From Ostrea edulis (Eukaryota), in contig NC_079172.1 in the NCBI RefSeq assembly GCF_947568905.1, forward strand, positions 27,032,001-27,096,000: a DNA stretch of 64,000 nucleotides, in the 5' to 3' direction. The notes beneath the pieces are model-generated. The model worked only from the letters and a program-made list of their open reading frames with translations, had not been told where the DNA came from and made no database searches. Position numbers and translations under genes: made by a program. Below, piece by piece: positions 30,756 through 46,672 of this stretch (positions are counted from its first letter, which is position 1; each line of letters opens with the position of its first letter).

Positions 30756-31239
30756 ATGGAACAAAGTAGAACTGATAAAACACAGTCAGGTGAATTGATC
30801 AATAGAAAAGATCCTAGGAATTCCCCAGCTCTATGGGTACACCATAGACCGAATGCTGGGAGCAGCTCACAAACTTCAAATGAACAAAGTGTTGTAGGAA
30901 TCTCCTCACAACTACAGACAAATGCCTGTAGATCAATTAGTAGTACCCAGCAGAAGACATTTCCTGTTATTCAATTGAATGCAGATACCAACCAAACTGC
31001 ACTAGAATTCTTCAAAATTGAAAGTACTTCTTCTCCCTCGTGTCATGTTGGAACAGTGCGAAATATTATACCCAGTAATTTACAGTGCAGCGTGTCAAGG
31101 TCAGATAGAGATGACCTCCATCAGACAGTTATACCAGCCTTTATTGTAGTGTCAAAGAAACGGAAGCTAGGAAATGAGGTCATATGTATTGATGAGGAGG
31201 AGGAGGAGAATTCTTCTGGCAAAAAAGATGGCAAACCAG
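30756..31239 (+). CDS. Coding exon 1 (S/T/Q-rich; KKRK NLS-like; VICIDEEEEE SIM-like)
   Basis: ORF 30756; acceptor TTTCAAG ending at 30745; donor CCAG|GTAACT. Confidence 0.75.
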
Positions 31240-31954
31240 GTAACTACAAACTGACGGAGAGATGGTATATGGTCATTTGGCATTCATCTTAGTAGCTATA
31301 GAACGAGCTGTTTGGGGAAATATTTGGGGTATCCCAATTTTCAGTTCTACAGCTCTCTGCTTCATAATGTATGGATAGAATCATTGAAAACAATCTCTAG
31401 CTCATTGGAACTATACTTTTATCCCAGCCAAGTTTTCAATGGTGTGTGTTTATAGGTCACTGCTGATAAAGTAGTGATTGGATATTTGAATACTTGCGTG
31501 GTCATTTACATTAAAAATGGCTGATTATAAATGAATCCTAGTCGGGTTTATAATGACATGTTTCACTACTGATGTAATTACATCTGGAGATGGTTGGATG
31601 TGGTTGATGACTCGACGGTCCATGAACAACATCAAAGCTGTTTTAGGTGTCACTACTGATGTAATCCATAGATTGAATTTTTGAGTACTTGTTAGGTCAC
31701 ATTACCCAGAAATACAATGGATACAAAAGTCTTATGTGAGCTACACCACCCAATATCAATAATAAACACATAGTCAATCATTGTATAATTTTCTTTCTCT
31801 CTCTCTCTGATATCATGCACATGTATATATACAAATGTAGATATATACCGCATAACGGGTATTTTCTGCAGATGGAAAGTTTTGCAATTTGATTCATAAA
31901 TAGTAGCAAATTATAGTCTGGGTTTGACAGTTTCCAATTTCTTCGATTCGTTTT

Positions 31955-32011
<57 letters not shown>

Positions 32012-35000
32012 GATTGTTATTTTGTGGATTTTCCTATCTGCAAAAAGTGGACAACTGCGGAAAATACCCATTATATAGTAATACCCATTTACCTATGTAG
32101 CAGTAAGATAAGTTCGATCGCCTGTGGCCAGATAGCTTGGTAGAGCACCTGATTAGGGGGATCTGAGTTCAAATCCTAGTCTTGTCCATTTTCTCTCTTC
32201 CTGTGACACCTAAAACAGCTTTGATGTTGTTGATGGACTGTCAAGTCACCAACCGTATCCAACCAGCTCCAGATGTTTTATCCCCTAATCTTCGGGACGT
32301 AAGGACACCAGAAGGTGATCAGTTTTGGTTTGTATAATTATTTAAGCTGTTTTTATCTTTTCAGATCAGAGTACTAAGGCAACATCAAAGACAACACACT
32401 TAATTCAACCAGTGGTTGGCCAAGGAAGTGTTGGCAGCCAAGTGCTCATTCAAACACAAACTATAAGCACAGCTGGCTCTAGAGTACCCCAGCAACCTCC
32501 TACAACTATCCCCCAGTCCTCTAACCTTATAAGCAAACTCAACTCAACTCAGCCCAACCCAGCAATTAGTACTCAATCATCAAAACAGACAACAAAAGAC
32601 ATCTGCAAAATAGGAAATATAGATAAAGAAAATGTGCCCACTTCAGCCATACTGTCAAGACAGACTGGTTCTCTCCCAAATGCTGGTTCCTTGTGCTGCA
32701 GTAAGGAATGTACGTACTCATCCTCATCGATTCCAGCAACAGACATATCAATTGGTAAGTTCATGTTAGCAATAAAAAAAAGAGAGTGAATTTTGTAGAT
32801 TTCATTTGTTTTGCTACAGAAATTTGATAATGAGAGAAAAGCTGCCAATTAATTGCTTGGTCAAAAGGCTAAAGTTCAAGATCTTGGTCAGTGATTCAAT
32901 ATTGCTAATGTTTTGGATGCAACAGCAAGAGTCTCTCAGCCTCATACTTGCTACATACATGTACATGATTATTGTAGGTGGGAGGGAAAACATAGCTGGG
33001 ATTTTAATCTGTATGAAAACTTTTAAAGTAAATAACAATAGAGTAGTGTTTCAAAAGTTCTCTTTATTTTGTATACATTTGACCACAGATTTACCTGTAT
33101 AAAAAGCTAGCACCACACCAGACTAAGTTCACTAAAGGTTTAAACCCTGGTATGGACACAACAAAGTGAATTCCCTATTGAGAAAGTACTGCTTTTCTCT
33201 TTTGATTTATTAAAAAACTATAAAGTTGTAAAGTTTTTTTTACATGAAGGAGATATTTCCCCTTAATCACCTCCAATGGTCATCCCTAATCTGCATAATT
33301 TTCTCAAAAACGAAATTGTTCAGTATTTAAATTTTTTTTCCACAAAATGAAAATATTCAACCTATTTTCCATGGTAAATGGGGCAGAGCATCGGGCCATT
33401 AGAAGGTACCCTGGTTTTTTGGGGTTTTTTTTCCATATTGGATTATGAATGTCCTTTGGACATATTTCTAGTTTATATTCAATGTTAACTAAATAAGTAG
33501 AAACACTGTGAGAGCATGACACCCTGTCATTGAGTACTACTAATCATTCATAATTATTGCTTTAATAATGATGAATACAATGGCATGGTTACTCAATCAT
33601 GAAGCTTGGACTTAGGGGGTGCTAGTACCAAGTGATTTGGTAGAGTTAAACCTCTTTTGTTTGAGGGTGAAACCTGTACTAATTGATATAATTGGTTCAG
33701 TATTACTGTGTCTGTGAGGTGATCCATCAGCACCTTGGCTTGTGGGAAGGATATAAATACAGATGTAGTACTAATAAGGCAAGAATGATCAAACCAAACT
33801 TGGCATACTTGTTCCCCAATGTGAGAGGAAGATTCCTGTTATTTCTCAAGATTAAAGGTCTTGGGTAATCAAAAAGTGAAAATAGTAATAATGGGTTAGT
33901 ATTTTCAAAGTTGTATGTCTTCCCCATGGTGTTGGTTCCTAGTCTATTTAGGAACATAATATTTTGCTTCCCAAGTTATATTTTGTTTGAGGGAAATCTT
34001 TCTACTTTATGATATTTAACAGAGCCATTTGAGAAATAACATTTTGTTAAAACTTGCCAATACAGTATTAGAAACATACATGTATATTCTCTTGCAACTG
34101 CATCCTTGATTGTTTGAAATTGTGTTTAGTCAAGTTTTATTTTCTACATAATTTTTCATTGTCAGAACCATATTTTGACCAAAGAGTGGTTTATTTGGAT
34201 ATTAATCTTTGATTACTAAGTACTGCATTGGATGGGGTTATTGCAGTATGAGCATTGAAAGCAATGATGGAGGGGGGGGGGGGGGGGGGCAGAGATGAAA
34301 AGAATTATAAATGAAATGATATGTGATGATGTCTGGACAATTCTACTCAGCAGTAGTGTGTATGTTGCATCATCTGGTTTCATGAAGGATTATTTTCCAG
34401 ACTTTTGATTATATGATAAAACAATGTATGCTTTTTTTGAAAATGTTACTTAAATGAGAAAACTGTTATTATAATGTTTTTATATCAAAGTTGAATAAGT
34501 AAATTAGTTGTCATACTTTCATATTGTATGTGTTGAAATATTAATGTTGTTTTCATCTATATTATAGATCAGAGTACATCAACATCACCAGATATGTGCA
34601 ATGTCTATGATAATGAGGAACCAATATCACTCATACAGCAAGGCATTCCATTGATTGGTAACTCCCAAGATCTCTGTGAATCAAACCCAGGTAGGATATT
34701 TGTTTTGTTTTTGCAGGGTTCAAAGTTCAAATCCTTTGGGGAAAGGATTTCTTCAGACTTTATTGCTGGTATAGAAATCATGGACTTTACACTGAGTGAT
34801 GAAATCCTACAGGGGAAGGATTAGGTATAGCAAAATCCTACAGATGGACTTTACAATGGCTAAATCCTAAATCTTCAGGATTTTATAGTGGTTAAATCCT
34901 AAATATGAAGGACTTTATAATGTTTTATTCCTAGAGATGAGTAACCTAATGGTTCAACTCATAATGGTTGAATTCTGCAGATGAAGTTCATAATAGTTTT

Positions 35001-38000
35001 AAAGTCCTTTAAGAAAAAAATATAATTATGGTCATAGGTTGATGAAGAAAGCAACGATAAGGCCAATAAAAAATTAACTAATAGTTTCTCAGGCCCCGCC
35101 ACATCCGTTGAAAAAGATACCACATGGAATTGTTTTTCCACTTTATTGTTGTTTATTTATGTAAATGAGGTAACTCTTATGTAATAAAATTTTAAGTATC
35201 TTTTTGATCAAATAATTATTGAATGCATACTCATTTATGTGCAAGTGTTTAAAAATAATAGTATAAACCTAATAGTAAGTAATGTGAAGCTATTTTTGAT
35301 ATACATGAGGAAGAAAAGGGTAACTCATTCTACAGTCAGCATAAAAAGAAAGATAACTCATGCTTGTCTGCCTCATCAAAATTTGAAACTTTTGGCCTGA
35401 GAAACTATTTATTAATTTTTTGTGACCGAATTTGGTTAACTTTATAGGGTCCACTTTCCATTCGGACAGAATAATCTAAAAATATACTGATAACAGCATC
35501 AATGACCTGCATATTTCACAATTCCTCATGATTTTCCCTGAATATAGAGGGCACTAAGTATGTTGTAGTCCTTTATTCATGATGTCAGTACTAGGAATGA
35601 TAGAACATTTGTTATTACATGTATATTTGATTACAATATCAAGTGTCGGTTCAACATGTTCAAGGAATTTTTATGTCACCGTAATCAGAGATTCTGGGAC
35701 ATACAGGTTTTTTTTAAAAGTTAAGTGTAATGATTGAAAATGATACAATCGACCATTAATGTTCACCACTAATTTTATGTCTGTGTCCTTTTGCGAATTT
35801 TTATGCCACCATAGTCAGAGATCCAGGGACATATAGTTTTCTATCTGTTTGTCCATAAAAAACTTTAACCAGTTACCTTCGCCATAACTTTAGAATAGAT
35901 GGTGAAAAGCCTTTCATATTTCACTTGTGAATTCTTTGTGACAATTAAAGATTTTTTTTTTGTACCAAAATTTTTTACCTTGACATTTTGGCCATATGGG
36001 GGGTAGCAGTGTTTCACAGACATATCTTGTTGTGCAAGCAATATTGGGTCATAATGTAACAATGTACATGTATGTAATTATAAAGATAATGAATATGAAA
36101 CAACAAGTAAAAAACAACTAATGAAAAAAACCCAGTTTAAAGCAAGAAAATAACCTCTAAAGGGTTAGTAAAAGTACTAATAAGTATCGTCGACTGCCCT
36201 ATTTCAGTGACTGACCAGAATCGGTGACCTGTTGTTTACGTGTGCGCGTTGTCGTTTCCGGGTGTAGATTGCGTCATAAATTTCGCTGTAGTGTTTGCAA
36301 ACATATATAGAGTACGTCTTCAATTTTTTTCCGAAAATGAACTACTAGAAGGAGAGTATGCAAAAAATCAACACGAGCACCCCAAAAATAAGCCCATTTA
36401 CTTATTACTTTTTCAAGCAAACCTTCAAATTAATATAAAGTATACCAAAAGTCTAGAATTTTACACTATGTTATTTTATTCATTGACATTTAAATGTACA
36501 TTCCTCCTGTATATACGTTTTAACAGTTAAAAACTTTGGCAAACCTGTATTAACAATGATTACCGAAATAGGTGACGTCACCGTTTTCGGAGCACAAAGT
36601 GACATGTTTTTTGTTACAAAAATATATTCAATTAACGTACCAATGAATTTGGAATTTTTGGATGAAAGTAAAGGAATTTAATTACTTTAAAGGTAGGTGT
36701 GTAATTTATCTATTTAATCCAAGTGATTAATGAGAAAATCATGGTTTATCACTAAGGTCACCGAAACTGGTCAGTCGACGATACTAAAAGTACTAGTAAA
36801 AAGCATTAAAAGTACATTAGAACTGTACTATGATTGATGAACTTACAATGATATTTGTATCATATCATTATATAAATTTAGACTGTGGCATGAAGTAAAA
36901 AAAAATTTCTTTATTTGTTTATGTTTCAGAAATGTTGAAAGAAGTCCCAAGGATTTGTAAAGTGTGTGGTGAAGAATCCAAGGGGAGTCCATTTGGCGTC
37001 CCTGCCTGTCTTTCCTGTTCGGTATGATGCCGATCTAAATTATGTAAAATTGTATAGCTGGCTGGATGAAAACACACTTCATTTACATAAATTAAAAGTA
37101 AAGTGTAATTTTGAAAATTCAATGAGGAAACAAGCTCTAAAAATAGATACACGATAGCAGGTGTAATGTGCATATAGATGTTTGTTAGGGTTTGCTTTTC
37201 TTGATTTTATGTCCCAGTATAAATGGCACATTTTGTTCGCTAATTCATAAGTTATGAAATTCTTTTTGACAGGTGTTCTTCAGGAACTGTACTGAAGACG
37301 ACTTGAAGATAAGTAGACATCGACAGTACATGGGGCGCTGCGGTTGTCAGCTTTGTCATCTCTTCTGTTGCTACTTACGCGGGATGAAACCAGAAAGTAA
37401 TTATCAAACAGTCTGACACTCACATTAACTATGCTACTCACAAACAAACAGTGTGACACTCACATTAACTATGCTACTCAAATGATTCTAATTTCTCTAG
37501 AATCATTCATGTATGTAAATGTCAATATATATTGTGGTCAATGATTTTTTAATAAATTTCCTCCAAATTTTTTATGGGATGTAGAGTCAATCAGTAGTTT
37601 TAAATTGAAATATCATGATTATACACTTTAGTATTAGCTAAGTTCCCAGAAAAGAATGATTTCACACCATGATCACTCTATATAGAGCTAGAAATTTTCA
37701 TTAATAAATGTATAATGGATATGTCATAAATCTCTGTTTACAATAATCATAGGCATTGTTTTCTTCATTGTACCTATGTAATTTTCTTGCTTGATTTGTA
37801 ATTTTAATGAAGTATAATGTTTTATATTTCAGATTCAGATTTTCTGGTGTGTACAGTTTGTAGTAAACCTTTCATATTAAGATACTTTCTGATACAGCAT
37901 CAGAAAAATTGCCAGAAGTCTCCAGTCAGTCCAAAATGTGACACATGTGGCCTCACGTTTGCTACAGACAGTCAACTGAAACAACACAAGAAGAGCAAGG

Positions 38001-41000
38001 TCTTTTGTGAAAAGGACAGTACTGCTGGTAAATGCTTTAATTTATGAGGTGGCCAGTCATTACACTGTGCAGAAGATTTTCAACCACTCTTTAAAAAACA
38101 TTTCATCATCTGTTGTGGCCTCATCCTAACCCCATGAGCCAAGATTTGAAAGAAAAAATATGTAAGGAATGCATAAATGTTCTGGAGAAAAAAGATTTCG
38201 ATTGAGATGTGAAATTTTGAATATTTTTTTATTTCATTACGAAAATCTGATCCCTTATCACGGTCCCATCTTCACTCTTGTGCCCATGATTTGAACAAAA
38301 TTGAATCTGTTGCACAAGAGGATGCATGCACCTCATTTTTACAAATTGTAGTCTTGATCTCTAAAGGAGATTTTTTTATGCATTTGCCTGCAAACTTTTT
38401 CTTATAGTTCATCCCTATGGTGTGGATGAACTTCCTTTCAGTATTGTTTTGACTAATTATAATCCTCTTTTTAAAATGAAGATTTGTAAAGATCAAGGAT
38501 GTATAAGGAAAAAAATATAATGATAAACAGCTACACTACGAATTCCCAAGACATTATGATAAACAGCTACATTACGAATTCCCAAGACATTATGATAAAC
38601 AGCTACACTATGAATTTCCAAGACATTATGATAAACAGCTACACTATGAATTCCCAAGACATTATGATAAACAGCTACAATATGAATTCCCAAGACAATA
38701 TTATGATGAAAAGCTACACAAGACAATATTATGGCCCATAGGGTCAGGATGGAGTCACATTTTCACATTTGGAATCTTCAATATCCTTTCATGAATGACA
38801 AGGTTATAGTTTGCACAACATGCAAGCATCCTCATGTATTGTAGCTTCCGGGTTGTTCGTATCAGGATAGACCCATAATTTTACTTAGGAATATAAAATA
38901 TTAATGTACATATGAAAATATCTTCTAAAGACAACATGAAAGTGCCTCCATGTAAAGTCATCTTGGTTCAAACCTTGGCTGTACAGTCCAAAATGGCCAT
39001 TATAGGTCACGACAAGGGTTCATAGTTGTGCATGAAATTTGACAAATTTTGTCCCTTTTTGTTATGAAAATTAAGATTATACAGAAATAAATTAATTCAT
39101 TTTTGTTCTCAAAGAAGGCTATATTTGACTAAAATGCAATTACTGTACATTTTTGTGCAGTGTAGATTTATATGTTCATGGCCAGGCCTGCTTCTTTAGG
39201 GCAGAGTTTTGGGTACCGTAAGGGTGAAGTGACATACCTTCAATGATATATAAACAAGAATATATAGTTTGTCAATGTTGTTTGGTAATATTTATGTTTA
39301 TTTAATTTAATTACTTGCATGACTCTTTGTAGGGTTCAAAGGGGGGGGGGGGGGGGGGGGGGGGGGGTTACTAAAGAGATCCTTAGAAATATGCACATCT
39401 CCAATGTATACAGGAAATGAGAGAATATAAATGTTTGGTTGATTCAACAATTTCAAATGAAAATAAATGTCTCAAATTATTTCAGGAACCGATGGGAAGT
39501 ATAAATGCGATATCTGCTGGGAATCTTTTTCATTGCTGGGTGCCTTAGTATTGCATCGGTACACACACCTAAAGGTGGATGGTGAGTGTGTTTTAAAAGA
39601 TTGTTATGTAGAGTAAAGAATCTGTGAAACAGAGACATGTCCATGCACATTAGCACATGAAATTGTAATGAGAATTCTTTGATTTTCATGGTCTTCAAAT
39701 TCCATGTTTTTGGTATAGAGTACAATTTTATTGGTATGTAAATTTCAGGAGAACTACACTTTGTTTTCTCCTCTTTCATAAGTATTGGGCATCATTAGTC
39801 ACATGATTCCGTGGTCTTGCTTGACCACCAAAAAAACCCAGTCAAAATTGGTGTACAACAAATTGTGATACCTCGGTGTATCTTTTCTTTCACTTTCTCT
39901 TTACAAAATAATTATTTTACGGGTTTTTTTTCATTTTAACTATTATAGACGAGATGACAGAGATGGAAAATTCATTAGAAGTAAAGACATTCCAGATTAA
40001 TCCAGAAAACCCTATTATCATTGATGATTGTGAAGAATTAATTGTCATTGATGTTGAAAAAGAAGGGAAAAACAACGACTCGGAAACTAATGATGAAAGT
40101 GGGATTGCAGATAATGAAATCAAAACTCACCAAGATGGAATCCGAACACATATTGATAATGTTGAGCATGAGGATCAAAATTCGAATATTCCAGAAGAAA
40201 GAGAAAATATTAGACATCTTGTAGATGGTCAGCCTGGGAGCAATAGTGAAAAAATGTGTGTTGATGATAGTGCAGTTTATTCTGAGGAAACCGAAAGCAG
40301 ATTACAATCTGGAACACAATTATCACAGGGATCCCAGAAATGCTCAACTGTCAACGACAAGAGTGAAATAAGCAGTGATGACACAGGAGAAATGGAGTCA
40401 GAAGAAAACCATGTAAAGACAGTGATTGGTGAAGAAGAGACGGAGAAAGAGTCTGGTCTTGGAAACAGCTGCAGTATAATTGAATACAACGAAGAATCAT
40501 CAGATGAACTCCTGGAGGAGGAGGATGATGAGTACATTCTGGTCACCTTTGACTCCAGTGATGAGGAAGACAATGTTAGTACTGTGAATCACTGTGGAGC
40601 TGACTGTATGGATAACAATGAACAGGAACATGATAATTCAAAAGATCACGAGATTCCACCCACTGCAGATGTGATTATAAGAAATAACGAAATGTCCAGC
40701 CAGTTTGCCGAATCGGGATCCACAACTATGCTTCCCGTTTCAACATCACACCTGGTGATGGAATCAATTGCTGGTACAGACAAGAATATAACTGAAGGCA
40801 CCAAACAAGGCAATGCAATCCCAGAAGTCAGTGAAGTTTCAATGGAATGTCAACAAGAAATTTCAGAAGAAAAAAATGGTTATGAAAATACAGATTTTGA
40901 AAAGATGCAACCATCTATGGAAATAGAGGAGGAAGAAAAAGCGTGCATGGTGAAAACTAAATCTAACACGAATATTCAGAGTGCACAATCAGAAACAGGA

Positions 41001-44000
41001 GAGACATGGGAAAAAAATAATTCCCCAGAAAGCAGTAACAAAGATTCTACTGTTACTGTTGATAAAGCAACAGCCTTACAAGACAGTTCATTTTCAGCTG
41101 ATCAATCAGGATCGAAATCGCATGTGAAAGTAATCACAAATGAAGATGGAGGGGAAAAGCTAGAGGTCCATTTTGTTCTGGATGATAAGACGAAAACTGG
41201 GACACCTGATATCCTTGAGAGTTTATCCTCATCAGAGAATGCTGTCACCGTTGATGAAATTTCCAGTACAGTACCAGATGACATTAATGTAGAATATCCA
41301 TCAAACGAAAGTGCCATAGATAAGGAAAACATGACTCCTGGAATTCAACCTCCACAGAATGATGACAGTCAGTGTAAGACGACAGGAAAAAGTACAAATG
41401 AAAATATGAATACCTGTGAGGAATCAGCAGAATTGTCGACTCTCTCAGACAAGCAGTCAGATGTTGGGAGGAAAGATGGAGCAAGTATGCCGCTTATTCA
41501 AGATCAAGAGAAAAGTGAAAGCAAACAAAAATATCAGAAAAATGAAGAACAAATGGCTACAGCAGACATCATTTGTTTATCTTCAGATGAGGAAGAGGAA
41601 AATGTCAAGGAGAAAAGTGCTGGGTAAGTAAACCAAACGGCAGCATAAGAACCTTCATCTTGAATGGCGGGAAGAACGGCATCAACAGCTCATGTTTCAA
41701 ACACAGGCATTTATTATGTTCCAACAAAACCACATATTCATGTTCCTACACTAAATACTAGTATTCTGTATAGGTACTTTTAAAATTTGTAATGTATTCT
41801 CTTTAGAGGTATATCCATCATATTACAACTGCAGTGCAGTCTAATTAAATGTAGTACGGCATAACAAATAATAAAACGTAGGGGCTAATTTTAATTAGAC
41901 TGAACTGCAGTGAAAATAACATCTAGAAATAAAAGTACACAGGTGAATTTAAAGCAGAATGACAATAGATTTTAATCAAAAATGTGAAAATAATCAGGTG
42001 TGAATTCAATACTGTGTACAGTATAAGTAGGTAAAAGTCAAGGTCAAATTTGCCCAAGTCGCATTTAGCCATGGTTTAGCACTAATAGAATCCTCCATTT
42101 GTACAAATGTGTGATAGGGAAATTCCACCAAGGGAACAAGTTTCGAAGTTAGGATGAGGCTTTACAGAGTCCTAGACAGCGAATCTTGTTCCAGAGGTGG
42201 AATTTCCCTATCCCACACATGTAAATAATGAAGGATTATTATTCTCACATTTTATCCACAGTTTAGTCAATGCATAGATTCAGGAGCTTTAAGAAAATCC
42301 TCATTTGAACTTCAATACGAAAACTAATTAGACAGGCAGAGAGAGAGCATAGCCGATAATGACTTACACTTGAAGCGTAAGCTAAAAAAAAAAAACACCA
42401 AGGTTGTCCACCAAAAGCTACATGAAATTGAAATTTTAAGAAAAATACGAAATATTTTACTTCACTATGTAACACAATTAATAGAAAATATATATCACAA
42501 TCAATGATGTTGCAGCAGTGTATTACAGAAAAATCTCTCATACATGTAGCTGTCTCACATGGGTAAAGTCGATATAACACTGGTGTTAATGTGAGAAATA
42601 GTTTTATTAGTTATTTAAACAAAACATTTACAATGTATGAGGTAAAATGCCACTACTGTGTAACAGAGATATACAAGACCCACACGTAGCACAAAGATTG
42701 CTAATGACTACAGTCTGTCATGACACTGAGTCAAGTTCATTTAGTCAAGGTTAATGAGAAAAAAGTTAGAAATATATTTGTTTCAGGCCATTTGTAGAGG
42801 ATAAGTATTACTAGTTGATACTTGGCTAGATTTTTTATGATTAAACAATGTGATGTAAGTCTGAATTAGTTTCAGAAAGGCACAAAGTTTAAGTTGCCAT
42901 GTCTCTTACCAATTTCAGGGACACAGGCCAAGAAACTGTACAGATAACTGACGACTCTTCGACAAATGCCCAAACATGCAAGGTCATACAGAAAGCATCC
43001 AAAAACAATATTTTGGGAGATGATCCTAAGAAAGTACTCAGAAATGAGTATTTGGGGAGTCATGTTAGTGAGCTCAATCCATCTTCAACAGGAACAACAA
43101 GTCGGTCTCACAAGTTAAGTCACATGGATATCGTCATTGATTTGGACCCTGAGGAAGATTCGTACATTTGTTACTTATGTAAAAGCAAATTTCCTTCTGT
43201 TCAGGACATCCAGCTGCATTTAAAGAAAGTTCACTCTTATTTCAATAACAGTATCATCCTAGACGGTTTTTTCTGCTGTCATTGTAAGGATAAGTTCAAT
43301 TCTTTAGGGGAGCTTTCAATTCATGAGTCAACTGTTCATGGTTTCAAATTTTCATGCCCTTTGTGTGGGATTCACCAGAAAGACCATGAACTATTTTTAA
43401 CCCATATTATGGAACATCTATCACCATGGATCCTTTATTGTGTTTTGTGTAAACTGGAATTTAGAAAGGAAGATGAATTCAAGGAACATAATTCTATCAA
43501 GCATGGTGGCAAAGTGGTGTTATCAGAGTCCTTGAAATGCTGTATTTGTGACAGTTTCTTTGCTGACAAAGGGAAATATTATGAACATCTTAGAATTTTT
43601 CATGATAAATTGTTTAAGTTTCCGTGCAAGGTCTGCTTTCAAAGTTTTTGTACAAGATCTGCACTGAAAGTTCACAGAAGCTCTCTTGATAACTTTCTTA
43701 GTGGATCAAGAACCAAAATAGCAGAATTCATTTTGATTGATTCTAATGCAGTTGACGTTAAAGTGATCAGTGAAATTCCCTTGAGTAACTTTCATCGCAG
43801 ATATTTATCAACTCCAACAACCTCAGAAAAGGCAAAACTTGCTTATAAAAGAATAGACCAAGAATCCATACTTAGAAAATGTAGTTTGACAGATACAAGG
43901 AAAGGGATTGTTATTAGTGGTGTAAATTCAAGGTCATTGCAGAATGACGAAAGTGCAGACAGCACTTTGGAGAGCAGACAAGGTCAGCCTGTGACAGATA

Positions 44001-46672
44001 TCAGCACACATGGAGATCCAAATGACATGACGAATAGGAATATTGCATGTGAAGAGGAGAGCTTGCCAGATATACAGCGTCCTAAGCAGTCAGAAACCTC
44101 TGCCAGTAGTATAACTGATCTGGTGTCTGCAAATGACGTCACATCAACTGCTGAGGACATGGTTACCAATCTTAGAATTGTTGGACACAAAACGGATAAG
44201 GAATCACAGGGACATGAGAAGGAATCACAGGGACATGTGAAGGAATCACAGGGACATGAGAAGGAATCACAGGGACATGAGAAGGAATCACAGGGACATG
44301 TGAAAGAATCACAGGGACATGTGAAGGAATCACAGGGACATGAGAAGGAATCACAGGGACATGAGAAGGAATCACAGGGACATGAGAAGGAAACACAGGG
44401 ACATGTGAGTGAAGAATTAGCATCAAACAGAGACCGGATTTCAATGGAGGTTGAATGTAAGGATACATCTTCAGTTACCACTCAGTCTACAACATCAACC
44501 TCAATAAATGACACAGAACCTGCCAATCGACCGTTCAAAAATCCTGAAAAAAGAAATTCAGTTTTGCCAACTATTGACGGGAGTGGCATTTTAGATGAAT
44601 CCACTCCAATGTTAACAAGCTGCGAACAGGGGTCATCCGGAAGAATGCCTGATAGTCAGACAGTCGATTTAACTACAATAACTGATGCAGACTTTATAGA
44701 GGAGGATTCAGGACAATGTAGCAATGGGGAATCTTTTATTCCTATTGGTAATATCATGACCATTCAACCAAAAGAGATCCGTGAGAAAGGTAAGATGCTG
44801 TGTCTATCATTAGAATTTAGATAAATAGGGGGAAATTGATTGTTATGTTCCTTATGCACCCAGATTCCTGCAGAAATCAGGTAGAGGTTGTTATGTGGAT
44901 GTGTTAAGTTTAATTGTTTTATGTATTTTATAATAATTATAGGAACTTCTATTGTCAGTGTGTCCATGTACTACAGGATTGTATGCGCTGCAAGTTTGTT
45001 CTTTTCTTTTTTCTTTTGTATTTTACTTCAAACTTCTGTGCAGCAGCGTATCATTAGTCAAAAAGAAAAGAAAAACATACTGAATGCAGAAATTTAACAA
45101 TTTCTTTTTGTTTGATATGACGTGTTTATTCATAAATGCATTTAGTTGATGAGCTCCTTTGCTATTTATTCTAACAAGTCTTTTTTCCATTTTGTAGAAA
45201 ATACCGGAGTCATGCAACATAGAGGAAATGTTGACAGTGGTATGAAAGATTCAACCATTTTCAGTTTTGATTGTTTAGTAGAGAAGGTATTTGATGAATA
45301 TGAGCATAAGACGAGAGACGCTTGGAGTAAAGAGGTCATTGTTGTGGAAGACGGAATGCCAGATAGTGGAGAGGCTGGAGAATACCATTCGTCCCAAAGG
45401 ACATTGAGAAGAGTTCAAAATAATGAAAATTTACCTACATCTTCGTCCAAGAGTTTGAATTCATCTCAGGATGAAAATATACCAGTTGAGATAGAGAATG
45501 TAATTTCAAATCTCCTCAGCTATTGCAAGAGACCCAAGATGATGTCATCACAAAGAAGGTCTTCTAATGCTGTCGAACGTATCTCCCCAAAAGTGAATTC
45601 TATACCTTATAAAGGAGCAAAGGGAATGAATAACTTTCCAATATTGCAAGGCGATCTAAAACATAACAGTGTCCCAGTTATGGTTGATCAAACAACCGAA
45701 AGGAATTTAAATGTTGACCAATCTAGTGATTCGTTGAGAAGCTTATCATCTCAGGAACATTCCAGAACAGAAGAAATGGATCATCAAGTAGCATCAACAC
45801 CGGATAATATAAAGTCAAACAATTTCTTTGTGACGAAATCGGTGTTATCTGTGCTTGAAGGCAATCCTTCATTGTTGTTGAATGACTGGAAAGAAACTTT
45901 GGAGGAAAGTGGCAAAGGGACGCGCCTGCGTGCTATGCATCCAGATTTGAACGATTTTATCAAACTTACAAATTGGAAATCTTCGCCACTTGTACTTGCT
46001 AAAGTCAATGCCCTTTTGCACAAAAAATTTCCTGTAGACAATAATATATCTAGAGCCGATACAACCAGAAGTAAAGATGGTCGCATTTTGATTGGAGAGC
46101 GAAAGGAATTATTTGCTGATATAAAAAATACTTTGGAAAAATTTGAGGATGACCCACATCTGAAAAGAAATCCCATTAATTTTGAAAATTTGGATAGAAT
46201 GCAATGTACAAAGGATGAATCCCTATCTAAAGAGAAGCACAATATGAAGAATACTGTGGAGGCTCAGAAAACGTACGTTTACAGCCACACTGACCTAGAT
46301 AATGCTGTAAAGCGGCTTAGTTCAGTTGTCCAAGCTATTGCGAAACGAAAGCTGGATGAATGTGGTCCTCCGGACTCAACTGAAATGCAAGTTGAACAAC
46401 CCAAAAAGAAAATCAAGATCGTTCCGGCAAAAGATGTCCTAAATCAGGATCAGGTCGTTGTTTCTATGGAGGGGGAAATGAAAAATGATGGAAATGAACA
46501 GGGGCCTTCTTCAGAAACGTTGAATTCTAGAAAATTGTCAGACCCATCTGCAGTAGTCATGGCTTATCCAGTAACAGTCACACAATTGTCAACGACCGTT
46601 CCACAAGTAGATATTAACAACACACTTGGTGCTGAAGAAGGTGGAATGCAGTTTGACATTGTAAAAGAGTAA
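30756..46672 (+). CDS. 2174-aa nuclear protein: divergent nuclear-receptor C4 DBD + C2H2/C2HC zinc fingers + SIM-like motifs (10 coding exons)
   Basis: Exons 30756-31239, 32365-32754, 34568-34690, 36930-37021, 37273-37396, 37833-38027, 39486-39581, 39949-41623, 42919-44789 and 45198-46672 are all GT-AG with compatible phases and sum to 6525 nt, open to TAA at 46670-46672. AATAAA at 47370-47375. Confidence 0.8.
31956..32008. repeat. (CA)n(TA)n compound microsatellite
   Basis: Direct reading. Confidence 0.9.
32118..32207 (+). mobile_element. tRNA-derived SINE remnant
   Basis: A-box TAGCTTGGTAGAG and B-box GAGTTCAAATCC, but no complete cloverleaf. Confidence 0.55.
32365..32754 (+). CDS. Coding exon 2 (low-complexity S/T/Q/P)
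   Basis: TTTTCAG acceptor, GTAAGT donor, phase 1-1, open frame. Confidence 0.8.
34568..34690 (+). CDS. Coding exon 3
   Basis: TTATAG acceptor, CCAG|GTAGGA donor, phase 1-1, open frame DQSTSTSPDMCN...SNP. Confidence 0.7.
36184..36784. mobile_element. MITE with TAA target duplication (PIF/Harbinger-like)
   Basis: TIR GTATCGTCGACTG...GGTGACC paired with GGTCACC...CAGTCGACGATAC; TAA on both flanks. Confidence 0.75.
36930..37021 (+). CDS. Coding exon 4: nuclear-receptor-type zinc finger 1 (C-x2-C-x13-C-x2-C)
   Basis: Encodes EMLKEVPRICKVCGEESKGSPFGVPACLSCS; TTTCAG acceptor; donor GTATGA in phase 0. Absent from the ORF track because it is short. Confidence 0.85.
37273..37396 (+). CDS. Coding exon 5: NR recognition helix and remodelled zinc finger 2
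   Basis: Encodes VFFRNCTEDDLKISRHRQYMGRCGCQLCHLFCCYLRGMKPE, matching the NR patterns FFRR and CQxCRLxKCxxxGM. Confidence 0.85.
37405..37480. repeat. 40-bp-period tandem duplication just after the DBD exon 5 donor
   Basis: CAAACAGT(C/G)TGACACTCACATTAACTATGCTACTCA x2. Confidence 0.85.
37833..38027 (+). CDS. Coding exon 6: two C2HC/C2H-type zinc fingers
   Basis: CTVCSKPFILRYFLIQHQKNC and CDTCGLTFATDSQLKQHKKSKVFC; canonical splice sites. Confidence 0.85.
38517..38720. repeat. Intronic 36-bp minisatellite, about 5.5 copies
   Basis: ATTATGATAAACAGCTACACTATGAATTCCCAAGAC units. Confidence 0.9.
39486..39581 (+). CDS. Coding exon 7: one C2H2 finger
   Basis: YKCDICWESFSLLGALVLHRYTH; TTTCAG acceptor and GTGAGT donor. 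Confidence 0.85.
39949..41623 (+). CDS. Coding exon 8: long acidic disordered region with SIM-like motifs
   Basis: 557-codon open frame; TTATAG acceptor; GG|GTAAGT phase-2 donor. Confidence 0.9.
42919..44789 (+). CDS. Coding exon 9: six C2H2 fingers (last degenerate) plus 7-aa tandem repeat
   Basis: Fingers run from YICYLCKSKFPSVQDIQLHLKKVH to FPCKVCFQSFCTRSALKVH. The phase-2 acceptor TTTCAG|G at 42918 matches the previous donor; donor AAG|GTAAGA. Confidence 0.9.
44198..44407 (+). repeat. Coding 21-bp repeat x10 (KESQGH[E/V])
   Basis: AAGGAATCACAGGGACATG(A/T)G x10, in frame in exon 9. Confidence 0.95.
45198..46672 (+). CDS. Terminal coding exon 10
   Basis: TTTGTAG acceptor in phase 1; 491 codons to TAA. 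Confidence 0.88.

What the first reader, a model, noticed from the sequence alone, without database searches (positions are those of the whole stretch)
30756..46672. Chimeric transcription factor: nuclear-receptor DNA-binding domain fused to C2H2 arrays, with no ligand-binding domain
Seen: one continuous 2174-aa spliced frame contains an NR-type C4 DBD (exons 4-5), directly followed by three C2H2/C2HC fingers (exons 6-7), an acidic spacer of about 640 aa, six more C2H2 fingers (exon 9) and a C-terminal region with no recognisable LBD signature. Established: nuclear receptors pair the DBD with an LBD (or lack it, as in knirps/NR0A), and C2H2 arrays belong to a separate superfamily. I know of no characterised protein combining them. 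Inference: exon shuffling (the DBD module is bounded by phase-1 introns) created a lineage-specific dual-mode DNA-binding regulator. This is the best candidate for an undescribed system in the window.
Basis: partly seen in the sequence, partly recalled or inferred. Interest (0 to 1): 0.88.

Follow-up and report, generated by a model that had tools for sequence, protein, structure and literature searches.

The report
Receptor-type zinc domain inside oyster finger protein
An oyster gene for a very long, mostly disordered zinc-finger protein really does carry a diverged copy of the DNA-binding domain of hormone receptors, without a hormone-binding part; the combination is unusual, but the domain has lost features needed for classic receptor-type DNA reading.

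Summary
Ten exons (30756-46672, + strand), each with AG/GT borders and matching phases, give one 2174-aa frame. Joined exons 4-5 pass Pfam's threshold for the nuclear-receptor DBD (zf-C4: 29.4 bits against a cut-off of 21.1, E 1.1e-6, profile positions 2-69 of 70). All 87 matches among solved structures are receptor DBDs. Three C2HC/C2H2 fingers follow, then an acidic spacer of about 640 aa, six more fingers, and a tail with no LBD.

RNA contigs of a sister species (about 95% identical) cover only the predicted exons 3-8 and break at their borders. Independent DNA contigs span exons 4-6.

The receptor-type domain is heavily altered:
- Finger 1 is intact.
- Finger 2 lacks two of its four cysteines and the D-box.
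- Two of the three base-contacting residues known from the glucocorticoid receptor are replaced.

The only homologues found (two Saccostrea species and a scallop, all 'uncharacterized') start at the exon-8 methionine and have no zf-C4. Saccostrea keeps stop-riddled remnants of exons 6-7 upstream.

My reading is a real, lineage-restricted domain fusion inside a fast-evolving nuclear zinc-finger protein with motifs that resemble SUMO-interacting motifs. 'Dual-mode DNA binding' is unproven and doubtful. I found no described protein with this combination. The scan has not noted it on other DNA.

The parts
30756..31239 (+). Exon 1. The ATG sits directly after an in-frame stop. Encodes a Ser/Thr-rich N-terminus with the motif VICIDEEEEE, which resembles a SUMO-interacting motif. 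Donor CAG|gtaact, phase 1.
32365..32754 (+). Exon 2, phase 1-1, low-complexity Ser/Thr/Gln-rich.
34568..34690 (+). Exon 3, phase 1-1, 41 aa. Covered by a 771-nt RNA contig of the sister species that runs on into exon 4. That contig carries an in-frame 6-nt deletion.
36930..37021 (+). Exon 4: first zinc module of the receptor-type domain (CKVCGEESKGSPFGVPACLSCS). All four cysteines are present with C-x2-C-x13-C-x2-C spacing.
37273..37396 (+). Exon 5: VFFRN plus a rebuilt second module (…GRCGCQLCHLFCCYLRGMKPE). It keeps the third and fourth cysteines of finger 2, the ninth conserved cysteine and the GM motif. It lacks the first two cysteines and the D-box (6-aa deletion).
37833..38027 (+). Exon 6: two C2HC-type fingers (zf-C2H2_jaz 31.4 bits). 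RNA contigs of the sister species start exactly at 37833 and run 18 or 28 nt further into the end of exon 5.
39486..39581 (+). Exon 7: one classic C2H2 finger, donor ATG|gtgagt.
39949..41623 (+). Exon 8: acidic, disordered spacer (24% Asp+Glu). It holds the conserved motifs YILVTFDSSDEED and IICLSSDEEEE, which resemble SUMO-interacting motifs, and ITNEDGGEKLEVHFV. Met504 (ATG at 39954) is where the Saccostrea homologues start.
42919..44789 (+). Exon 9: a block of six widely spaced C2H2 fingers, conserved in bivalves, then a disordered region. That region includes a 21-nt x 9.9 coding repeat (44198-44405) giving KESQGHE/V heptads.
45198..46672 (+). Exon 10: mostly disordered tail with a few conserved helices (…MHPDLNDFIKLT…, …DLDNAVKRLSSVV…) and the stop codon. 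No ligand-binding domain.

Best explanation
This is a real single-copy gene of an oyster-like bivalve. It encodes a 2174-aa, fast-evolving, largely disordered nuclear zinc-finger protein.

The conserved core is exons 8-10: an acidic region with motifs that resemble SUMO-interacting motifs, a block of six atypical C2H2 fingers, and a short helical tail. In this lineage the protein also carries an N-terminal extension (exons 1-7). That extension contains a diverged nuclear-receptor-type C4 domain (exons 4-5) placed directly in front of three C2HC/C2H2 fingers (exons 6-7).

Shown: the C4 domain is homologous to receptor DBDs, the exons are expressed and spliced in a sister species, and there is no LBD.

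Inferred: the domain no longer works as a classic dimerising reader of hormone-response elements. Two zinc ligands, the D-box and two base-contacting residues are gone. It more likely serves as an accessory zinc module, for DNA, RNA or a protein partner, within a multi-finger regulator of chromatin or transcription that may depend on SUMO. How the receptor module was acquired (exon capture from a receptor gene is the likeliest route) and when are unresolved.
For: - Gene model: 2174-aa open frame, consensus splice sites and matching phases.
- Receptor homology: zf-C4 at 29.4 bits against a cut-off of 21.1, E 1.1e-6, nearly full profile. All 87 PDB sequence matches are receptor DBDs. By my count from the alignment, identity to AncGR over the first 35 residues is 17/35, of which only 4 are cysteines. 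The motif is unique in the window.
- Transcription: in two RNA runs of a sister species, depth lies only on predicted exons 3-8 and is zero in the unique parts of the introns. One contig joins exon 3 to exon 4. Contigs start at 37833 and continue into the end of exon 5. Depth of about 4.0 on 38001-38027, on exon 7 and on 39949-40005 fits one contig joining exons 6, 7 and 8.
- Not a mis-assembly: an independent DNA contig of 1816 nt spans 36754-38569 at single-copy depth.
- Core family: Saccostrea echinata (46% identity), S. cucullata and Mizuhopecten homologues share exons 8-10.
- Conserved motifs resembling SUMO-interacting motifs.
- No LBD.
Against: - No RNA run of the window's own species was available. 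The RNA joints are inferred from contig ends and depth, and the exon 4-5 junction was not directly seen.
- No orthologue with exons 4-5 was recovered, so selection on the receptor-type module cannot be measured.
- Saccostrea makes do without the N-terminal extension and starts at the exon-8 Met. A short isoform could therefore be the main product here too.
- The SUMO link rests only on motif resemblance.
Confidence: 0.6

Rival explanations
1. Exon shuffling produced a working dual-mode transcription factor in which the receptor-type domain still reads DNA (half-site-like elements) alongside the C2H2 arrays. It would act as a ligand-independent factor, like the DBD-only receptors.
For: Finger 1 and the hydrophobic core (FGV, VFF, CY..GM) are fully kept. 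The module is a symmetric 1-1 unit. The exons are expressed in a sister species. DBD-only receptors such as knirps do bind DNA (established knowledge).
Against: The positions of GR Lys461 and Arg466 are Ser363 and Asn368. Two cysteines of finger 2 and the D-box are missing. 1-1 symmetry is shared by the neighbouring exons. No donor gene was found. Saccostrea has dropped the N-terminal extension.
Confidence: 0.2
2. The N-terminal extension is a dispensable or decaying appendage. The main product is the short protein that starts at Met504 in exon 8, as annotated in Saccostrea, and the receptor-type exons are a relic or a minor isoform.
For: The Saccostrea proteins start at the homologous Met (MSEMEN against MTEMEN). 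Exon 6 and 7 remnants with in-frame stops lie upstream in S. echinata, and half of exon 6 remains in S. cucullata. The receptor-type domain is already degenerate.
Against: 501 codons of exons 1-7 are stop-free in an AT-rich genome. The sister species expresses exons 3-7, and the depth pattern fits a contig joining exons 6, 7 and 8. Its exon-3 indel is in frame. Finger 1 is intact.
Confidence: 0.14
3. The resemblance to receptors is convergent. The C4 pattern would have arisen from a collapsed pair of C2H2 fingers after partial duplication of the six-finger block, and is not derived from a receptor gene.
For: Exon 6 best matches fingers 5-6 of the conserved block (E 6e-5 to 9e-5 in a search of six sequences). 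One alignment places CLSC…H over finger 4 of the scallop block. Another bivalve protein (P0003) carries two such blocks in tandem.
Against: The six-finger blocks give no zf-C4 match. By my count from the alignment, non-cysteine identity to receptor DBDs in finger 1 is about 42%, and the match runs over both halves to the GM motif.
Confidence: 0.06

Closest known systems
DBD-only nuclear receptors (NR0A: knirps, knirps-like and eagle in Drosophila; the two single-DBD sequences CgNHR40/41 reported for the Pacific oyster, PMC4070562)
   Same: A receptor-type C4 domain with no ligand-binding domain.
   Different: Those keep all eight zinc ligands and the basic recognition helix, and they carry no C2H2 fingers. 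Here finger 2 is rebuilt, the recognition helix is altered, and nine C2H2-type fingers sit in the same chain.
[quoted passage not shown] 1995; title seen in the reference list of PMC6647185, paper not read)
   Same: A precedent for a diverged receptor-type zinc domain inside a large chromatin protein that is not a receptor.
   Different: The protein context differs (SET-domain methyltransferase). I made no sequence comparison here.
TRPS1-type proteins (a GATA-type C4 finger combined with C2H2 and Ikaros-type fingers; from my own knowledge)
   Same: A C4 treble-clef DNA-binding finger and C2H2 fingers in one long repressor-like protein.
   Different: The C4 finger there is GATA-type, not receptor-type. 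No homology is implied.
2DBD nuclear receptors of flatworms and molluscs (PMC1810520, PMC4070562)
   Same: They show that receptor DBD modules can be duplicated or moved as units in lophotrochozoans.
   Different: They keep an LBD, and both of their DBDs are canonical.
Uncharacterized proteins LOC133202884 (Saccostrea echinata), LOC134259356 (S. cucullata) and LOC110464592 (Mizuhopecten yessoensis)
   Same: True homologues of exons 8-10: the acidic region with ICLSSDEEEE, the six-finger block and the C-terminal helices.
   Different: None has a zf-C4 domain or the N-terminal fingers. In Saccostrea, exons 6-7 survive only as broken remnants.

Membership tests
Nuclear receptor DBD (Pfam zf-C4, PF00105) | Profile match above the curated gathering score | tested here: met
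   29.4 bits against 21.1, E 1.1e-6, profile 2-69/70 on joined exons 4-5. Exon 4 alone gives 20.8 bits.
Nuclear receptor DBD (Pfam zf-C4, PF00105) | First zinc module C-x2-C-x13-C-x2-C with the G…G..[FY]GV core | tested here: met
   C342, C345, C359 and C362; sequence CKVCGEESKGSPFGVPACLSC.
Nuclear receptor DBD (Pfam zf-C4, PF00105) | Second zinc module C-x5-C-x9-C-x2-C, including the D-box | tested here: not met
   The alignments to AncGR and AR need two 3-aa gaps. The first two cysteines are absent. Only C388, C391 and the ninth cysteine (C396) align.
Nuclear receptor DBD (Pfam zf-C4, PF00105) | Recognition helix C-[EG]-[GS]-C-K-x-F-F-[KR]-R with its base-contacting Lys and Arg | tested here: not met
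   The helix reads CLSCSVFFRN. Ser stands where the Lys is and Asn where the last Arg is (alignment; contact residues from established GR-GRE structures).
Nuclear receptor superfamily (full members) | Ligand-binding domain (Hormone_recep, PF00104) | tested here: not met
   No Pfam match at E<=1 on exons 8, 9 or 10. The AF2 model of exon 10 has mean pLDDT 36.8 with six isolated helices. Atlas features resemble disordered nuclear proteins.
C2H2 zinc-finger proteins | C-x2-C-x12-H-x3-5-H/C fingers recognised by Pfam | tested here: met
   zf-C2H2_jaz 31.4 bits (exon 6), zf-C2H2 21.3 bits (exon 7), zf-C2H2_4 33.5 bits with four stretches (exon 9).
ZNF451-type SUMO ligase zinc-finger proteins | ZNF451 paired-finger profile (PF23108) | tested here: not met
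   E 0.78, 10 bits against a cut-off of 29. Only motifs resembling SUMO-interacting motifs are shared.
SUMO-binding proteins (SIM-bearing) | Hydrophobic core [VIL][VIL]x[VIL] flanked by an acidic/Ser run; binding to SUMO | tested here: inconclusive
   The motifs are present, and two are conserved in Saccostrea. Binding cannot be tested with these tools.

The most novel reading that the evidence does not exclude
The receptor-derived C4 module still binds DNA. Tethered to a repressor-like scaffold with motifs resembling SUMO-interacting motifs and nine C2H2 fingers, it would act as a ligand-independent competitor or co-reader at nuclear-receptor response elements in oysters. That would be a hybrid class of transcription factor not described so far, created by moving a receptor DBD into a C2H2 protein.
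Probability: 0.12. Interest if true: 0.75.

Novelty: new variant of a known kind. Interest (0 to 1): 0.5.

Why it matters
The DNA-binding domain of nuclear receptors is among the least mobile animal protein domains. It is almost always found with its ligand-binding partner, or alone in a few DBD-only receptors.

This case places it inside a C2H2 zinc-finger protein, with its second zinc module rebuilt and its DNA-contact residues changed. That gives a natural experiment on what the first receptor finger can do by itself and on how transcription-factor domains get recombined.

It also matters in practice. Inventories of mollusc nuclear receptors, used in endocrine-disruption work, would pick this gene up through zf-C4 searches although it is not a receptor.

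The protein family itself is uncharacterised and fast-evolving (by MAFFT, the two S. cucullata isoforms are 67-68% identical to S. echinata). It carries motifs that resemble SUMO-interacting motifs.

Tried and rejected
- Word-based protein search with the 75-aa receptor-type domain (candidates limited to 41-131 aa): one candidate shared words, and none scored. This says nothing about longer proteins.
- Profile search with an alignment of the Saccostrea proteins plus exons 8-10 of the window, made to reach proteins of 912-2900 aa: only the two Saccostrea proteins came back. No full-length orthologue with the N-terminal module could be fetched.
- tblastn and blastn of exons 1-7 against 10 kb upstream of the homologues in S. 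echinata, S. cucullata and the scallop: only exon 6 and 7 remnants in Saccostrea, and no trace of exons 4-5. Short neutral remnants could have escaped detection.
- Synteny check with the downstream glycosyl-hydrolase-63 gene of S. echinata: only repeat matches in the window.
- Atlas feature searches of the tail and of the six-finger block: only generic disordered or generic C2H2 look-alikes.
- AF2 of the tail: confidence too low for a fold search, so none was run.
- Literature searches for a zf-C4 plus C2H2 architecture: nothing relevant.
- Not attempted: structure prediction of the spliced receptor-type domain. It has no window reference, and a single-sequence zinc-finger model would say little.
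- Not attempted: a receptor phylogeny.
- Considered and rejected: assembly chimera (an independent DNA contig spans exons 4-6 at single-copy depth) and chance motif.
Full report
**What is in the sequence**

The window is AT-rich eukaryotic DNA (about 35% G+C). Between 30756 and 46672 on the + strand I rebuilt a ten-exon gene from stop-free segments and splice signals.

| Exon | Coordinates |
|---|---|
| 1 | 30756-31239 |
| 2 | 32365-32754 |
| 3 | 34568-34690 |
| 4 | 36930-37021 |
| 5 | 37273-37396 |
| 6 | 37833-38027 |
| 7 | 39486-39581 |
| 8 | 39949-41623 |
| 9 | 42919-44789 |
| 10 | 45198-46672 |

Every exon has an AG acceptor behind a pyrimidine tract and a GT donor. The exon 4+5 pair enters and leaves in phase 1 with a phase-0 intron between them. 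Exons 2, 3, 6 and 7 are 1-1 as well.

**The receptor-type domain**

- Exon 4 alone gives 20.8 bits on Pfam zf-C4, just under the cut-off.
- Joined exons 4-5 (aa 333-407) give 29.4 bits against a cut-off of 21.1, E 1.1e-6, over profile positions 2-69 of 70.
- A sequence search of all solved structures returns 87 matches at E<1, all nuclear-receptor DBDs. The best are the ancestral glucocorticoid and androgen receptor DBDs at 27.8 bits.
- By my count from the printed alignment, the first 35 residues are 17/35 identical to AncGR, and only four of those identities are cysteines. The match is therefore not just cysteine spacing.
- The pattern C-x2-C-x13-C-x2-C occurs once in all six frames of the window.

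I therefore take homology to receptor DBDs as established.

The domain is far from canonical:

- Finger 1 (C342, C345, C359, C362) is complete.
- The recognition helix reads CLSCSVFFRN. In the alignment to GR-type DBDs (CGSCKVFFKR), the Lys after the fourth cysteine is Ser363 and the final Arg is Asn368. From the established GR-GRE structure, Lys461, Val462 and Arg466 make the base contacts, so two of three are lost.
- Finger 2 needs two 3-aa gaps in the alignment. Its first two cysteines and the D-box loop are absent. C388, C391, the ninth conserved cysteine (C396) and the GM motif remain. Extra cysteines (C369, C386, C395) might rebuild a zinc site.
My alignments agree.

**The rest of the protein**

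- Exon 6 holds two C2HC-type fingers (zf-C2H2_jaz 31.4 bits) and exon 7 a classic C2H2 finger.
- Exon 8 is an acidic spacer (24% Asp+Glu) with motifs that resemble SUMO-interacting motifs.
- Exon 9 holds six widely spaced fingers. The sixth lacks its last ligand in oysters. A disordered stretch follows, including a 21-nt x 9.9 coding repeat.
- Exon 10 has no Pfam match to the hormone-receptor LBD at E<=1. Its language-model features resemble disordered nuclear proteins.
- AF2 on exon 10, with a four-sequence alignment, gives mean pLDDT 36.8 and six isolated helices, not a twelve-helix sandwich.

So there is no LBD.

**Is it one transcript?**

Only RNA runs of a sister species were available (organism A; exon matches differ at about 5% of positions). 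Four DNA-like runs of the window's own species were also listed.

Laid on 34400-40399, the two RNA runs have depth only on predicted exons 3-8 and on intronic repeats. Depth is zero in the unique intron stretches 37400-37799, 38400-39399 and 39600-39799.

| Link | Evidence |
|---|---|
| Exon 3 to 4 | A 771-nt contig lies on 34567-34687 with 96 further letters. The depth bins place those letters on 36927-37022, which is exon 4. |
| Exon 5 to 6 | Contigs of both runs begin exactly at 37833 and carry 18 or 28 more letters. The bin depth of 0.28 equals 18 nt at that contig's depth, placed on the end of exon 5. |
| Exon 6 to 7 to 8 | Depths of 0.55, 1.88 and 1.02 in three bins all give about 4.0 when divided over 38001-38027, exon 7 and 39949-39999. 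That fits one contig joining these exons. |
| Exon 4 to 5 | Not seen directly. Only exon 5 fits exon 4's phase-0 donor. |

The joint table was truncated to high-depth repeat joints, so these links are inferred from contig ends and depths rather than read from listed joints.

The sister species has a 6-nt, in-frame deletion in exon 3.

An independent DNA contig of 1816 nt spans 36754-38569, covering exons 4-6, at single-copy depth with four differences. The arrangement is therefore not an assembly chimera and not a repeat.

**Relatives**

An exhaustive HMMER search with exon 9 found these homologues, identified:

| Protein | Length | Species | Identity to exon 9 |
|---|---|---|---|
| P0001 | 1659 aa | Saccostrea echinata | 46% |
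| P0002 / P0151 | 1283 / 1330 aa | S. cucullata | 39% (P0002) |
| P0005 / P0153 | 1398 / 1405 aa | Mizuhopecten yessoensis | 37% (P0005) |

- All are 'uncharacterized' in their source annotation.
- The matches further down the list appear to be generic C2H2 proteins.
- All homologues begin at or after the equivalent of exon 8. S. echinata starts MSEMEN…, matching MTEMEN… at Met504 here. None has zf-C4.
- In the S. echinata locus, an exon-6 remnant with two in-frame stops lies 2 kb upstream of the start codon (L001:7922-8107, E 2e-13). An exon-7 remnant with one stop lies at L001:8874-8957.
- S. cucullata keeps only half of exon 6, with one cysteine replaced (L002:7177-7287).
- No trace of exons 4-5 was found there or in the scallop.

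So the N-terminal fingers predate the split from Saccostrea and decayed there. Whether the receptor-type exons were present then is open.

The family evolves fast. By MAFFT the two S. cucullata isoforms are 67-68% identical to S. echinata, and BLASTP gives 57%. No closer orthologue was retrievable.

**How it probably works**

The conserved elements are the six-finger block, the two acidic motifs YI[IL]V[ST]FDS..EED and [VI]ICLSSDEE, and the C-terminal helices. Together with the disorder and acidity, they point to a nuclear scaffold-type zinc-finger regulator that may bind SUMOylated partners. This is inference from motifs only.

The N-terminal composite of a receptor-type C4 module and three fingers is an addition found only in this lineage so far. 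Given the lost ligands, D-box and base contacts, I think classic receptor-type dimeric reading of response elements is unlikely. The intact first finger and hydrophobic core suggest that a folded zinc module with some other binding role is retained.

Rivals are given with odds in their own section:
- a dispensable relic, with the short Met504 form as the main product;
- convergence from collapsed C2H2 fingers, a weak lead.

**Comparison and novelty**

It is not a nuclear receptor in the full sense. It has no LBD, an incomplete second finger and an altered recognition helix. It is not a clean NR0A-type DBD either.

The nearest precedents are:
- DBD-only receptors, including two single-DBD sequences in the Pacific oyster inventory (PMC4070562);
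- the receptor-type DBD variant reported in Drosophila Trithorax (title checked through PMC6647185);
- 2DBD receptors;
- by design, C4-plus-C2H2 proteins such as TRPS1 (my own knowledge).

Literature searches found no description of a zf-C4 plus C2H2 protein. I class it as a new variant of a known kind.

The scan's earlier notes contain nothing like it on other DNA.

Noticed in passing
window:57943-59040 (- strand): An intact 365-aa ORF with HTH_29, HTH_Tnp_Tc3_2 and DDE_3 domains. This is a Tc1/mariner-type transposase, possibly still an active copy.
   Followed up: partly
window:35000-36800 and 38200-38400 (introns 3 and 6): High-copy repeats. Summed DNA contig depth is roughly 10 to 1000 times the single-copy level, and the repeats are also present in RNA contigs of the sister species.
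   Followed up: no
window:44198-44405: A 21-nt coding tandem repeat (9.9 copies, 96% matches) giving KESQGHE/V heptads inside exon 9. Copy number may vary between individuals.
   Followed up: no
window:38520-38719: A 36-nt tandem repeat (5.5 copies) in intron 6. It is open in several frames on both strands and mimics ORFs.
   Followed up: no
L001:7922-8107 and 8874-8957; L002:7177-7287: Pseudo-exons in Saccostrea. Remnants of exons 6 and 7, with in-frame stops or lost cysteines, lie upstream of the annotated start codon of the homologous gene.
   Followed up: yes
P0003 (541 aa, Logan contig, organism not recorded): A protein made of two tandem copies of the bivalve six-finger block. This shows that the block duplicates as a unit. 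Exon 6 of the window's gene weakly resembles fingers 5-6 of the block.
   Followed up: partly
   Followed up: no
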